Source: Octopus sinensis (lineage: Eukaryota). From it: DNA of 64,000 nt. The stretch's first letter is position 1. Each line of letters opens with the position of its first letter. The position numbers were made by a program, and so were the translations under genes. The notes beneath the pieces were generated by a model. The model worked only from the letters and a program-made list of their open reading frames with translations, was not told where the DNA came from and made no database searches. Shown here in pieces: positions 2,829-61,656 of the stretch. Location of the stretch: contig NC_043023.1 of assembly GCF_006345805.1 (NCBI RefSeq), positions 6,014,001-6,078,000 of the forward strand, written 5' to 3'.

Positions 2829-3199
2829 GTACATCTGGAAAAAGGACAAACGGGACTTCAACGTGGCTGGCAGTGATGACCTTATCTCCACAGTAGAAAA
2901 CGAGGGAACACTTGTCTTCAAGCAACCCAAAAAGAAGGATGCCGGCACGTATCAATGTTTTGCAAACAACTCTTATGGGGTGGCCATGTCAGGCATCGTT
3001 GAGCTACGTCTTGCCTTCCTGCAGCCGTACACCAATCAGGAACCAGAGACCATCACTGTATCACCAGGGTCATGTCTCGTCCTCCCTTGTAACAAGCCAA
3101 TCAGTTACCCTGAGGCCAAATTCACATGGCTATTGAAATACAGTGATGGGCGATTAAAGGTCCTTGACTTCACTGAGCGAATCCAAATGGATCACAAAA
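2829..3199 (+). CDS. Cassette A exon: Ig1 C-half + Ig2 N-half (YIWKKDK...ERIQMDHK)
   Basis: Polypyrimidine tract and acaaccag acceptor; donor gttagt at 3200; 371 nt, same length as paralogous exon 32351-32721; phase 2 to phase 1. Confidence 0.9.
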
Positions 3200-3662
3200 G
3201 TTAGTATTACCTTCTTACCATTGCCACCACTTCATCTTTGATTTATAGATATCAGCATGTTATTGTTTAGCTCTAGGTCAGTCCTGATCCTTAGACAGAC
3301 ATGGTCAAAGATGTTCCAGCAGTGACCATCCCATCTATTCAAACATAGTGTACATAGGACTACATTGCCTAATGTCATTGCCGTCATACTGGCACTTGTG
3401 CCGGTGGCACGTGAATAAACATTCAAGTGAGGTTGTGCAGATGGCACATAAAAAACACCATTTGAGCATGGCTGTTGCCAGTACCACCTGACTGGCCCTC
3501 GTGCCGGTGGCACGTAAAATCAGCCACTACACTCTCGGAGTGGTTGGCGTTAGGAAGGGCATCCAGCTGTAGAAACTTTGCCAGATCAAGATTGGAGCCT
3601 GGTGCAGCCATCCGGTTCACCATTCCTCAGTCAAATCGTCCAACCCATGCTAGCATGGAAAG

Positions 3663-3978
3663 CGGATGATGATGATGATGATGATGACGACGACGACGAA
3701 GATGGCGACAACGACAATGAAGATGATGATGATGATGACGACGACGACGAAGATGATGATGATGATGATGATTATGACAATGACGATGACGCCGATTACG
3801 ATGGCGACGATGACAGTGAAGATGATGATGATGATGAAGATGATGATGATGATCATGATGACGATGACGATGACGATGACGACGATGACGATGACGATGA
3901 TGATGATGACGATGATGATGACGATGACGATGATGACGATGACGATGACGATGACGATGATGATGATGATGATGATGC
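3663..3978. repeat. (GAT/GAC)n microsatellite grown from a SINE tail
   Basis: Direct inspection. Confidence 0.95.
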
Positions 3979-4734
3979 TGATAGTATAATAGTTGTCGCA
4001 GTTACTTAGCCCTAGAACAGCCCTGATGCAAAAGAGGCATGATCAAAGATGTTCCAGCTGTCAATGCCCTATCTTTTATCAAGACACAGTGTATCTTGGA
4101 CTACACTATCTAATGTATAGTATAGTAATTAGTGTTAGCGAACATTTGGACTTTTATTCAGACATAGCAAATCTGGAACTACATTATCTGATATGATTGA
4201 TTCCCTGCTTCTGCTTTCAATCAAAATATTAATGGAAGAAGATAGAATATTTAAATTGAAACGCCCCACTGACTAACAGGTAAGGAGGTTGTTCATAGTT
4301 GCATTGTTGCTTTGGTAGAGTTACTACTATGACTTAGATAGTTCAGTGATTTGTGAGTGCTAAGGACAGCAGATGTGTAAGGGAAACCGCCATGATATAT
4401 ATATATTTCTTTACTACCCACAAGGGGCTAAACATAGAGGGGACAAACAAGGACAGACAAACGGATTAAGTCGATTACATCGACCCCAGTGCATAACTGG
4501 TACTTAGTTTATCTATTTCTTTACTACCCACAAGGGGCTAAACATAGAGGGGACAAACAAGGACAGACAAACGGATTAAGTCGATTACATCGACCCCAGT
4601 ACATAACTGGTACTTAATTTATCGACCATAATGAAGACACCAATATTAAAATATTAATGTAAAATAACAATAATTTCACACCTAGAAATAAACACAAAAT
4701 TCTCTCCACACCTATTCTCCTAATTCTTTTCCAG

Positions 4735-4863
4735 CCAACCTTGTCTTTGCAAATGTACAAGAAGAAGACTCCTACAAAGACACTGCCTATGTTTGCGCTG
4801 CAACCAATTTGTTTTTACGAAGAATCAATATGCTTAATACCATTTATTTGAGAACCTTACCAG
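4735..4863 (+). CDS. Cassette A exon: Ig2 C-half (NLVFANVQEEDSYKDTAYVCAATNLFLRRINMLNTIYLRTLP)
   Basis: ttttccag acceptor, gtgagt donor, 129 nt, phase 1-1, conserved YxC; not in ORF track. Confidence 0.9.
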
Positions 4864-4885
4864 GTGAGTTTTTTTTCATTTCCAA

Positions 4886-60253: not shown

Positions 60254-60437
60254 TGGTTGTATACTGTCAATCTAACGTGAACGTGACAGTAGGGTATTAC
60301 ACCACCGCTGTTTAGCCCTAGGAAGCATCGACGCTTCCTGATGGCTTCGACAGGCAGCGTCGATGCTTCCTAGGGCTAAACAGCGGTGGTGTAATCCCCT
60401 ACTGTCACGTTCACGTTAGATTGACAGTATACAACCA
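60254..60437. repeat. Near-perfect inverted repeat (82-bp arms, 20-nt spacer)
   Basis: 60254-60335 versus 60356-60437, one mismatch. Confidence 0.9.
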
Positions 60438-60942
60438 AATTATCCATACATTGCAGAAAAATACGTTACCAGCCAGCTATGAGACTCAAACTCACATCCC
60501 AGTGATTATGCGTCAAGTGCTTTACCATGAAGCTAAACTGCCCAGTAACAAATTCTTCTGCAATTTTAGAATTTATAAATTTAGCTTCATCATCATTAAC
60601 AAGCAACTGGATTTGTGCTCTTCCAGTAGACCAGGCTTGCCATTGCTGTCATTTTCTTTCGTAGATGGTCACAATGTGGTTGTGACATTGGTTGTGAGAT
60701 TAGTGGAGGTGACCAAATCAAGTTTGCCCACATGAACTTGGTGTCTGGGCAAGGATCTATTTAATTTACACCCAGGCCTATAATGGGAAAGTCTACTTCA
60801 GCTCAATTTGAACTAAAAAGGCAAAGATTTTGAATGAATACCACAAGATAACTTTAGTAGAGTTGACCACGAACATATTTGAACTAGGTCTCTGGTTTGA
60901 GGATAATCTCTTCCTCTCCACCCCTACATACGCACAGATGTC

Positions 60943-61423
60943 TTAACCCTTTCAATACCAACACAGCTGAAACTGCCTCTGGTTCTGTAGTGCAAATGCC
61001 TTGTTGTCATAAGTTCTGAATTAAAATCTTCCACCAAACCTTAGTCACAATTTATGTCCCTAACACTAACTTAATGATAACTAAGTTATTTTACTAAATT
61101 CTTTGTTATATTTAAAATTAATTGAAAGAAACACAGAGCATCTCAACAAAATACGGTAACAAAAGGGTTAAGATATATAATAGAGAAACAATTCTTAACC
61201 CTTTTGTTACCAACCCGGCTGAAACTGCCTTTGGCTCTGAGTACAAATGTCTTGATTTCATAAGTTTTGAATTAAAATCTTCCACCAAACCTTAATCACA
61301 ATTTATGTTCCTAGCACTAGCTTGATGATAACTAAGTTATTTTACTAAATTCTTTGTTATATTTAAAATTAATTGAAAGAAACACAGAGCATCTCAACAG
61401 AAATATGGTAATGAAAGGGTTAA
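60943..61423. mobile_element. Second doublet of the piggyBac-like MITE
   Basis: 60943-61171 and 61195-61423, TTAA-CCCTT termini. Confidence 0.75.
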
Positions 61424-61565
61424 AGACCCTGAAAATAAGTAATGGGTGCAGACCATCAACCAATTAAATCATTAAAGTTAACAACAAAAAGAAAAAAAAT
61501 AATTCCACAATTCTCAGAATTTATATTCCACTAATTTTTCTGCATTGTTCTGACAATCTTCTCAG

Positions 61566-61656
61566 AATTTGGTCTTAGCAGATGCTGGCGTCTATCGTTG
61601 TGATGTTAGCAACAAGTATGGAATGGTCTCGGCAACAAGGACACTTATAGTTCGAC
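61566..61656 (+). CDS. Cassette B exon: Ig5 C-part (NLVLADAGVYRCDVSNKYGMVSATRTLIVR)
   Basis: cttctcag acceptor, gtgagt donor, 91 nt, phase 0 to 1, DAGxYxC motif. Confidence 0.9.

What the first reader, a model, noticed from the sequence alone, without database searches (positions are those of the whole stretch)
2829..61656. Tandemly repeated neuroglian/L1 Ig cassettes that can splice into one frame, with no FnIII/TM in between: a possible clustered, variable-ectodomain adhesion system
Seen: two exon-for-exon paralogous Ig blocks with identical exon lengths (371/129/103/194/135/144 nt). The Ig6 donor (AAA G|gt) and the Ig1 acceptor at 31228 (ag|GT ACC) join as SVK-G-TQPP in frame. I find no FnIII, transmembrane or FIGQY-tail exon between them. 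Established: L1-family proteins are 6 Ig + FnIII + TM, and Dscam and clustered protocadherins create neuronal identity through variable ectodomains. Inference, three models: (a) one receptor with a greatly extended Ig chain; (b) alternative variable cassettes spliced to a shared constant FnIII-TM region; (c) A is a secreted hemolin-like or truncated paralog. Models (a) and (b) would be an unusual architecture for this family.
Basis: partly seen in the sequence, partly recalled or inferred. Interest (0 to 1): 0.85.

Follow-up and report, generated by a model that had tools for sequence, protein, structure and literature searches.

The report
Secreted triple neuroglian-ectodomain gene in octopus
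The two repeated Ig blocks are consecutive parts of one already-annotated Octopus sinensis gene: a fast-evolving copy of neuroglian that strings three Ig1-6 ectodomains into one predicted secreted protein, not a clustered variable-receptor system.

Summary
Blocks A (2829-14523) and B (32351-50931) match exon for exon (371/129/103/194/135/144 nt, all AG/GT). The Ig6-to-Ig1 junction is in frame, and no FnIII or TM exon lies between them. Corrections: those six exons cover only Ig1b-Ig4. B also has Ig1a (31228-31333) and an intact Ig5 (57076-57257, 61566-61656). A has no Ig5. A's Ig6 exon is triplicated, with one copy broken.

My spliced product (938 aa) is an exact substring of RefSeq XP_036370266.1, "hemicentin-1-like" of Octopus sinensis. 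That model reads: one signal peptide, three neuroglian-type Ig cassettes in one ORF, then a stop. It has no fn3 and no TM.

The canonical neuroglian gene lies about 100 kb upstream on the same strand. It has an identical signal peptide and identical exon lengths, so the cassettes are copies of its exons 2-11.

The cassettes evolve fast (dN/dS 0.8-1.0) yet keep their ORFs. A structure model of a paralogous cassette gives the L1/hemolin horseshoe.

Model (a) is supported as a long secreted chain, not a receptor. Model (b) is not supported. The gene is annotated but uncharacterised, and its interest is moderate.

The parts
2829..3199 (+). Cassette A exon, Ig1 second half + Ig2 first half (371 nt)
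   Evidence: AG/GT borders, phase 2->1; exact match to XP_036370266.1
4735..4863 (+). Cassette A exon, Ig2 second half (129 nt)
6798..6900 (+). Cassette A exon, Ig3 first half (103 nt)
8319..8512 (+). Cassette A exon, Ig3 second half (194 nt); 97.9% identical to the B copy, so probably recent gene conversion
12264..12398 (+). Cassette A exon, Ig4 first half (135 nt)
14380..14523 (+). Cassette A exon, Ig4 second half (144 nt); spliced directly to an Ig6 exon because A has no Ig5
19512..19794 (+). Ig6 exon copy 1, broken by four single-base indels (pseudo-exon or assembly error); absent from all RefSeq isoforms
23738..24022 (+). Ig6 exon copy 2 (285 nt, phase 1-1); present in isoforms X1, X3, X4
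26769..27053 (+). Ig6 exon copy 3 (285 nt, phase 1-1); present in isoforms X1, X2, X4; its donor joins Ig1a of B
29020..29064 (-). Inverted 45-nt fragment of an Ig1a exon (VLPCKASGEPQPTY); a rearrangement scar inside a ~3-kb insertion absent from the paralogous locus
31228..31333 (+). Cassette B exon, Ig1 first half (106 nt); begins with an acceptor in phase 1 and has no ATG or signal peptide
32351..32721 (+). Cassette B exon, Ig1b/Ig2a (371 nt)
37349..37477 (+). Cassette B exon, Ig2b (129 nt); second Ig2 cysteine replaced (YARVAF)
42147..42249 (+). Cassette B exon, Ig3a (103 nt)
43878..44071 (+). Cassette B exon, Ig3b (194 nt)
46787..46921 (+). Cassette B exon, Ig4a (135 nt)
50788..50931 (+). 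Cassette B exon, Ig4b (144 nt)
57076..57257 (+).
61566..61656 (+). Cassette B exon, Ig5 second part (91 nt, phase 0->1); B's Ig6-like exons and cassette C lie beyond the window end

Best explanation
The window covers the middle of one protein-coding gene of Octopus sinensis. Its RefSeq models are XP_029652303.1 (X1, 1872 aa) and XP_036370266/67/68 (X2-X4), named 'hemicentin-1/2-like'.

Shown: the gene is a derivative of the neighbouring neuroglian gene. The neuroglian 5' part was copied without the FnIII, TM and tail exons: the signal-peptide exon plus the ten exons (106/371/129/103/194/135/144/182/91/~285 nt) that encode Ig1-Ig6. The Ig1-6 exon block was then repeated three times in tandem inside the new gene. 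All domain borders are phase 1, so the blocks splice head to tail into one ORF.

The architecture is: signal peptide, A (Ig1-4 plus one or two Ig6), B (Ig1-5 plus two Ig6-like), C (Ig1-6), then two more codons and a stop. That gives a predicted secreted glycoprotein of 17-19 Ig domains carrying three L1-type Ig1-4 horseshoe modules. Alternative inclusion of the duplicated Ig6 exons gives isoforms that differ by one Ig domain.

The array keeps changing by unequal crossing-over and gene conversion. The protein evolves near-neutrally at the amino-acid level while its reading frame and splice sites are preserved.

Inferred, not shown: it acts as a soluble multivalent L1-type binding protein. It could cross-link or compete with membrane neuroglian and its partners. 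Or, like lepidopteran hemolin (also a secreted neuroglian derivative), it could serve humoral recognition.
For: - Exact identity of my 938-aa spliced product with residues 57-994 of XP_036370266.1.
- All predicted junctions occur in isoforms X1-X4: 14523>23738, 14523>26769, 24022>26769, 24022>31228, 27053>31228, 50931>57076 and 57257>61566.
- The RefSeq protein has only Ig-type Pfam hits (I-set x16, Ig_3 x17) and no fn3, while canonical neuroglian has fn3.
- Its only hydrophobic segment is the N-terminal signal peptide.
- No Pfam domain was found in the ORFs between exons or cassettes.
- No credible signal-peptide exon lies between cassettes in three loci.
- The cassette aligns collinearly with neurofascin Ig1-6 (E 3e-71).
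- An AlphaFold model of the paralogous cassette protein P0001 (pLDDT 86) matches the neurofascin horseshoe (3p3y) at TM 0.91 and rmsd 2.4 A, and hemolin at 0.85. Extended Robo1 Ig1-4 scores only 0.42-0.44.
- The canonical neuroglian gene (L004) has the same exon lengths, 106/371/129/103/194/135/144/182/91/288, and an identical 20-aa signal peptide.
- Canonical neuroglian sits at 5.814-5.910 Mb (+) of CM016885.1. The window gene sits at about 6.011-6.118 Mb (+).
- A versus B: dN/dS 0.99, with differences spread evenly over codon positions, yet no stop (P about 0.008 by simulation) and no indel in six exons.
- B versus its O. bimaculoides ortholog: dN/dS 0.77 and 78% aa identity. Canonical neuroglian Ig1-4 is 92% identical between the same two species.
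- The inverted paralogous locus has already acquired disabling lesions, while this gene has none.
Against: - The RefSeq proteins are automated Gnomon models. I could not inspect RNA-seq or cDNA support, so single-transcript status is inferred from the models, the frame and the lack of internal start or stop features.
- Gnomon demonstrably made a chimeric model next door: P0013 spans 493 kb across other genes.
- dN/dS near 1, the lost Ig2 cysteine in B, the missing Ig5 in A and a dead Ig6 copy would also fit a decaying locus.
- The signal-peptide exon, Ig1a of A, cassette C and the terminal exon lie outside the window. I saw them only as protein.
- The horseshoe model was made for a paralog (73-75% identical to A and B, 95% to C), not for the window's own protein.
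- Function is pure inference. No expression or binding data were found.
Confidence: 0.75

Rival explanations
1. Tandem but separate genes. Each cassette is its own hemolin-like secreted protein, with a start exon and terminator that I did not detect, and the gene predictor merged them because the phases are compatible.
For: - All Ig borders are phase 1, so a predictor can chain any cassettes.
- Gnomon made a clearly chimeric 493-kb model in the same region.
- Read-through of the Ig6 donor gives a short hydrophobic tail and a stop after 19 codons, which could serve as a terminal exon.
Against: - No ATG-plus-hydrophobic exon with a phase-1 donor is conserved in the A>B interval, in the paralogous interval of L001, or in the B>C interval of O. 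bimaculoides.
- B's first exon starts at an acceptor in mid-codon.
- Independent annotations join Ig6 to Ig1a in O. sinensis (P0163, P0013/P0001) and O. bimaculoides (P0012).
- RefSeq lists four isoforms that differ only in Ig6 exon inclusion.
- The model has a 2-codon terminal exon only after cassette C.
Confidence: 0.1
2. A transcribed but functionless, decaying duplicate of the neuroglian 5' half. The long ORF is a leftover, not a maintained product.
For: - dN/dS of 0.99 (A versus B) and 0.77 (between species), with substitutions spread evenly over codon positions.
- B's Ig2 has lost its second cysteine, A has lost Ig5, and one Ig6 copy is frameshifted.
- The inverted neighbour copy is visibly broken.
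Against: - The ORF is intact over 1872 codons with all splice sites canonical.
- The chance of no stop after 133 random substitutions in the A/B exons is about 0.008.
- No indel occurs in any of the 12 paired exons, although the flanking introns are full of them.
- The one indel against the O. bimaculoides ortholog is in frame.
- 37 of 38 expected Ig cysteines are kept.
- The broken paralog shows what decay looks like at only 3-7% divergence.
Confidence: 0.1
3. The cassettes are alternative variable ectodomains chosen one at a time and spliced to a shared constant FnIII-TM region, as in protocadherin clusters or Dscam.
For: - The cassettes are similar, fast-evolving and phase-compatible.
- The canonical neuroglian gene, with FnIII-TM exons and an identical signal peptide, is on the same chromosome within about 100-200 kb.
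- Duplicated Ig6 exons are alternatively included.
Against: - The FnIII-TM exons lie upstream of the cassettes on the same strand, separated by an inverted copy. Ordinary cis-splicing therefore cannot join them.
- No fn3 or TM exon is in the window or in the RefSeq product.
- B has no promoter-proximal first exon of its own.
- All annotated isoforms contain A, B and C in series.
Confidence: 0.03

Closest known systems
Neuroglian / L1 family (L1CAM, CHL1, NrCAM, neurofascin); specifically the canonical O. sinensis neuroglian gene (XP_036370302.1, CM016885.1:5813657-5909543)
   Same: - Each cassette is a complete, collinear Ig1-Ig6 ectodomain of this family.
- The exon lengths and phases are the same as in the canonical gene next door.
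- The signal peptide is identical.
- Ig1-4 is predicted to form a horseshoe.
   Different: - No FnIII repeats, no transmembrane segment and no cytoplasmic tail.
- The Ig1-6 module is present three times in series.
- Only 52-59% aa identity to canonical Ig1-4, and it evolves about three times faster between species.
Hemolin (Lepidoptera; PDB 1BIH)
   Same: - A secreted protein derived from the neuroglian Ig region, lacking FnIII and TM.
- Horseshoe fold (TM 0.85; sequence E 1e-39).
- From my own knowledge, hemolin is an immune-induced humoral recognition protein.
   Different: - Hemolin is a single 4-Ig horseshoe in one insect order. This protein has three 6-Ig-type modules (17-19 Ig domains) in an octopus and arose independently.
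- Immune role and inducibility are untested here.
Bivalve two-module proteins: Ostrea edulis XP_056000705.1 'neuronal cell adhesion molecule-like' (816 aa) and Solemya velum KAL5013687.1 (773 aa)
   Same: A signal peptide followed by two L1-type Ig1-4 modules in tandem, with no FnIII or TM. The same idea of concatenated horseshoes in a secreted molluscan protein.
   Different: - They have two 4-Ig modules rather than three 6-Ig modules.
- Only 35-37% identical, so probably independent duplications.
- They too are known only as predictions.
Hemicentin (the RefSeq name of this gene)
   Same: A long secreted chain of I-set Ig domains.
   Different: No VWA, G2F, EGF or fibulin-type module; only Ig families hit. 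The best sequence and structure matches are L1/contactin, not hemicentin. The name is a similarity artefact.
Clustered protocadherins / Dscam1 variable exon arrays
   Same: Tandem paralogous ectodomain-coding units; some alternative inclusion of duplicated Ig6 exons.
   Different: No shared constant region, no per-unit promoter exon, and the units are used serially rather than one at a time.

Membership tests
L1CAM / neuroglian family | Six N-terminal I-set Ig domains, collinear with family members | tested here: met
   Cassette B plus Ig6 aligns with neurofascin Ig1-6 over residues 10-598 (E 2.8e-71). Ig1-4 alone gives E 3.5e-58.
L1CAM / neuroglian family | Ig1-Ig4 folded back into a horseshoe | tested here: met
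   The AlphaFold model of paralog P0001 (pLDDT 86.3) matches 3p3y at TM 0.91 and rmsd 2.4 A. Extended Robo1 scores 0.42-0.44. This is a prediction on a paralog, not on the window's own chain.
L1CAM / neuroglian family | Fibronectin type III repeats after Ig6 | tested here: not met
   No fn3 in the ORFs of the window or in the 1872-aa RefSeq product. Canonical neuroglian scores fn3 at 1e-29.
L1CAM / neuroglian family | Single transmembrane segment and ankyrin-binding cytoplasmic tail | tested here: not met
   The only hydrophobic 19-mer in P0211 is the signal peptide. Canonical P0205 has a second one at 1122-1140.
L1CAM / neuroglian family | Shared gene structure with the canonical gene of the same genome | tested here: met
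   Canonical exons are 106/371/129/103/194/135/144/182/91/288 nt. Cassette exons are 106/371/129/103/194/135/144/182/91/285 nt.
Hemolin | Secreted: signal peptide, no membrane anchor | tested here: met
   Seen in the RefSeq product. The signal-peptide exon lies outside the window.
Hemolin | Exactly four Ig domains forming one horseshoe | tested here: not met
   17-19 Ig domains in three modules.
Hemolin | Induced by infection; binds microbial surfaces and haemocytes | not testable with these tools
   No expression or binding data. The literature searches found nothing on this gene.
Hemicentin | N-terminal VWA domain, C-terminal G2F/EGF/fibulin module | tested here: not met
   Only Ig-type Pfam families hit P0211.
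Clustered variable-exon receptors (protocadherin type) | Each variable unit has its own promoter and first exon and is spliced to shared constant exons | tested here: not met
   B starts at an acceptor in phase 1 with no ATG or signal peptide. The ORF stops after cassette C. The FnIII-TM exons are upstream.
Dscam-type mutually exclusive exon arrays | Arrays of alternative exons for the same domain, exactly one used per mRNA | tested here: inconclusive
   The two intact Ig6 copies are used singly (X2, X3) or together (X1, X4) in RefSeq models. Transcript data were not available.

The most novel reading that the evidence does not exclude
Octopods, and independently some bivalves, have evolved secreted 'poly-horseshoe' proteins: concatemers of the neuroglian adhesion module. 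On this reading they are under diversifying selection and act as multivalent humoral recognition or adhesion-modulating factors. That would be a molluscan counterpart of insect hemolin, with isoform variety from alternatively included, recently duplicated Ig6 exons and copy-number turnover between species.
Probability: 0.3. Interest if true: 0.6.

Novelty: new variant of a known kind. Interest (0 to 1): 0.4.

Why it matters
This would be a second, independent case, after lepidopteran hemolin, of a neuronal adhesion receptor's Ig module being freed from its membrane anchor. Here the module is also multiplied threefold in one chain. That offers a natural experiment on how L1-type horseshoes behave when presented multivalently, and on how adhesion genes are recruited for other recognition tasks.

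It also corrects a misleading database name ("hemicentin-like"). And it shows that the locus is not a Dscam- or protocadherin-like diversity generator, which matters for anyone cataloguing neuronal identity systems in cephalopods.

Tried and rejected
- An all-against-all ORF comparison of the window was swamped by a ~400-bp interspersed repeat. Restricting it to low-copy segments worked.
- The word-indexed homology search was patchy. It missed P0001 and the RefSeq product even with near-identical queries. The exhaustive representative search and a third query with canonical neuroglian found them.
- I first took L001 (P0013/P0001) for the ortholog of the window in another species. The mosaic identities and the exact match to P0163 showed it is an inverted, diverged paralog on the same chromosome, with cassette B deleted.
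- The 969-aa model P0013, with one signal peptide and two cassettes, looked like independent support. Its 493-kb span across unrelated genes makes it chimeric, so I do not lean on it.
- The '420-aa ORF' at 15021-16283(-) is only poly-Ile/poly-Asn microsatellite.
- The signal-peptide exon scan found only low-complexity TG-rich candidates that are not conserved.
- Literature searches (octopus+neuroglian, cephalopod IgSF expansion, octopus+hemicentin, hemolin+neuroglian+duplication) found nothing on this gene.
- Exact look-ups of P0022, P0162 and P0163 returned no locus because only the longest isoform of a gene is indexed. P0205 worked.
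Full report
WHAT IS IN THE WINDOW

The window is octopus DNA. The best protein hits to the first block are "neuroglian-like" proteins of Octopus sinensis and O. bimaculoides.

- A: 2829-3199, 4735-4863, 6798-6900, 8319-8512, 12264-12398, 14380-14523.
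- B: 32351-32721, 37349-37477, 42147-42249, 43878-44071, 46787-46921, 50788-50931.

The two blocks are 87.6% identical in nucleotides and 76.5% in amino acids. Both score only as Ig domains in Pfam. These six exons encode the second half of Ig1 through Ig4, not Ig1-6.

Mapping the O. sinensis protein P0001 onto the window and reading the sequence added the remaining exons.
- The Ig1a exon of B is 31228-31333 (106 nt).
- B has an Ig5 in two exons, 57076-57257 (182 nt) and 61566-61656 (91 nt).
- A 285-nt Ig6 exon follows A in three copies.

The three Ig6 copies sit in a recent local triplication, with units 18989-20962, 23212-25151 and 26244-27550 at 94-97% identity. The units are separated by a ~360-bp satellite. 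Copies 2 (23738-24022) and 3 (26769-27053) are intact. Copy 1 (19512-19794) has four single-base indels.

A has no Ig5 exon. Spliced together, A, Ig6 x2 and B form one open frame of 1033 aa, and all 17 exons have AG/GT borders. One full cassette is 1740 nt, exactly 580 codons, going from phase 1 to phase 1. The in-frame SVK-G-TQPP junction is therefore real. It is also what any pair of Ig-domain exons would give, so it carries little weight alone.

NOTHING ELSE BETWEEN THE CASSETTES

I scanned all non-repetitive + strand open segments of at least 28 aa against Pfam at E<=1. The regions were upstream of A, between Ig4 of A and Ig6, between A and B, inside B's long introns, and after Ig5b. No fn3 or any other domain appeared.

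I then searched for ATG-plus-hydrophobic-core exons ending in a phase-1 donor. Only TG-rich low-complexity candidates turned up in the A>B interval. None turned up in the corresponding intervals of the two related loci.

WHAT KIND OF Ig MODULE

Against the PDB, Ig1-4 matches neurofascin best (E 3.5e-58). Contactins follow, then hemolin (1e-39), each in one collinear stretch. The whole cassette aligns with neurofascin Ig1-Ig6 in order (E 2.8e-71).

An AlphaFold model of P0001 has mean pLDDT 86.3. P0001 is a paralog, 95% identical to cassette C and 73-75% to A and B. The model superposes on these structures:
- neurofascin horseshoe 3p3y: TM 0.91, rmsd 2.4 A
- CNTN4/CNTN5: TM 0.90
- hemolin: TM 0.85
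- the extended Robo1 Ig1-4: only TM 0.42-0.44

THE DECISIVE RESULT

An exhaustive search with P0001, followed by a search with canonical neuroglian, returned XP_036370266.1, "hemicentin-1-like isoform X2 [Octopus sinensis]", 1777 aa. My spliced product (A exons, Ig6 copy 3, and B exons including the two Ig5 exons; 938 aa) is an exact substring of it, at residues 57-994. The window is therefore O. sinensis, and the locus is already modelled as one gene.

The product reads as follows:
- signal peptide MKISPVSIFILVAVAGSVYS
- A: Ig1-4 plus Ig6
- B: Ig1-5 plus two Ig6-like domains
- C: Ig1-6
- then Gly-Pro and a stop

Isoform X1 (1872 aa) includes both intact Ig6 copies of A. X2 has copy 3 only. 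X3 has copy 2 only. X4 skips B's first Ig6-like exon.

The protein hits only Ig-type Pfam families, whereas canonical neuroglian also hits fn3. Its only hydrophobic 19-mer is the signal peptide. It keeps 37 of the 38 expected Ig cysteines, and the missing one is in Ig2 of B.

In the paralogous locus the last Ig6 exon still has a good donor (ATG G|gtaagt). The "GP-stop" ending therefore implies a short dedicated terminal exon after cassette C.

ORIGIN AND NEIGHBOURHOOD

The canonical neuroglian gene of the same assembly (X1, 1408 aa, with fn3 and a TM segment) lies at CM016885.1:5813657-5909543 on the + strand. Its coding exons are 61 (signal peptide), 106, 371, 129, 103, 194, 135, 144, 182, 91 and 288 nt, followed by the FnIII exons. 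These are the cassette exon lengths. Its signal peptide is identical to that of the window gene.

From the coordinates, the window gene occupies about 6.011-6.118 Mb on the + strand. In between, at 5.927-~5.99 Mb on the - strand, lies an inverted, diverged copy (P0001 plus the 3' part of P0013; locus L001). In that copy:
- the Ig6 exon has a 1-nt deletion that split the gene models;
- the Ig5a exon has a stop and a frameshift;
- cassette B has been removed by a crossover inside the 371-nt exon.

O. bimaculoides contigs are collinear with B (L003) and with the B>C junction (L002). The gene model there also joins Ig5b, Ig6 and the next Ig1a.

The FnIII-TM exons are thus upstream of the cassettes, not downstream. 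This, together with the stop after C, removes the basis for a shared constant region.

EVOLUTIONARY MODE

A versus B gives dN 0.135, dS 0.137 and dN/dS 0.99, with differences spread 48/48/37 over the three codon positions. Yet there is no stop. Simulating the same number and type of substitutions leaves the frame open in only 0.8% of trials. There is also no indel in any exon, while the flanking introns align poorly. Exon 4 is 97.9% identical between A and B, which points to gene conversion.

B against its O. bimaculoides ortholog gives dN/dS 0.77 and 78% aa identity, with one in-frame indel. Canonical neuroglian Ig1-4 is 92% identical between the same species. So the gene evolves fast in sequence but is held open. 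This fits either diversifying selection or tolerance of change within a chain whose truncation is harmful.

RELATIVES ELSEWHERE

Ostrea edulis XP_056000705.1 (816 aa) and Solemya velum KAL5013687.1 (773 aa) each have a signal peptide and two L1-type Ig1-4 modules in tandem, with no FnIII or TM. Secreted concatenated horseshoes are therefore not unique to octopus. They are known only as predictions. My literature searches found no description of any of them.

VERDICT

The cassettes are read as one long Ig chain (model a), but the product is predicted to be secreted, not a receptor. The "clustered variable ectodomain" idea (model b) is not supported.

What remains unproven is transcript and protein evidence, which I could not inspect, and any function. 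The most likely mechanism is a soluble multivalent L1-type binder that modulates neuroglian-based adhesion or acts in hemolin-like recognition. This is inferred from architecture and homology only.

Noticed in passing
window 23-443, 6278-6686, 7214-7620, 7775-8179, 11816-12218, 43397-43799, 51585-51987, 52268-52666, 53285-53691, 59673-60079, 61815-62187, 62992-63404 (and more): A ~400-bp interspersed SINE-like repeat in more than 20 copies in both orientations, 82-92% alike. It is also frequent in the paralogous locus L001 and fills much of the introns.
   Followed up: partly
window 20968-22840 and 25146-25754: A ~360-bp satellite in direct and inverted copies (93-98% identical) lies between the three duplication units that carry the Ig6 exon. 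It probably served as the substrate of the local triplication.
   Followed up: partly
window 19512-19794: Ig6 exon copy 1 differs from copies 2 and 3 by four single-base indels, three of them in short A, G or C runs. It could be a true pseudo-exon or an unpolished long-read error in a repeated region.
   Followed up: partly
window 10805-11248 (- strand): A 147-aa ORF inside intron 4 of cassette A has two C2H2 zinc-finger motifs (zf-met 25.4 bits, above the cut-off). A homologous intron piece lies in B at about 45.3-45.7 kb. It may be a relic of the expanded octopus ZNF or transposon repertoire.
   Followed up: partly
window 29020-29064 (- strand), within 28.2-31.1 kb: An inverted 45-nt fragment of an Ig1a exon sits inside a ~3-kb stretch that is absent from the corresponding interval of the paralogous locus.
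   Followed up: partly
window 15021-16283 (- strand) and 55200-57060: Very long AT-rich microsatellites. One reads as a 420-aa poly-Ile/poly-Asn 'ORF'. Another ends directly at the acceptor of the Ig5a exon, and an (AGC/AGT)n run follows that exon's donor.
   Followed up: yes
window 37349-37477 (B, Ig2b exon): The second conserved cysteine of Ig2 is replaced (YARVAF instead of YVCAAT). The O. bimaculoides ortholog and cassettes A and C keep it.
   Followed up: partly
L001 (CM016885.1:5916629-5969279, reversed) and the P0013 gene range: The RefSeq model XP 'neurofascin-like' (P0013, 969 aa) spans 493 kb across a metallo-beta-lactamase-fold gene, a ubiquitin-activating E1 gene and the window gene itself, so it is almost certainly chimeric. 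Its first exons suggest a third partial copy of the locus near 6.45 Mb.
   Followed up: partly
L001 30512-30683 and 37295-37417: In the inverted paralog the Ig5a exon is dead. Ig5b there differs from the window's B copy by a 1-nt deletion, which puts it in frame with Ig4b when Ig5a (182 nt) is skipped. This could be compensation or chance (1 in 3).
   Followed up: partly
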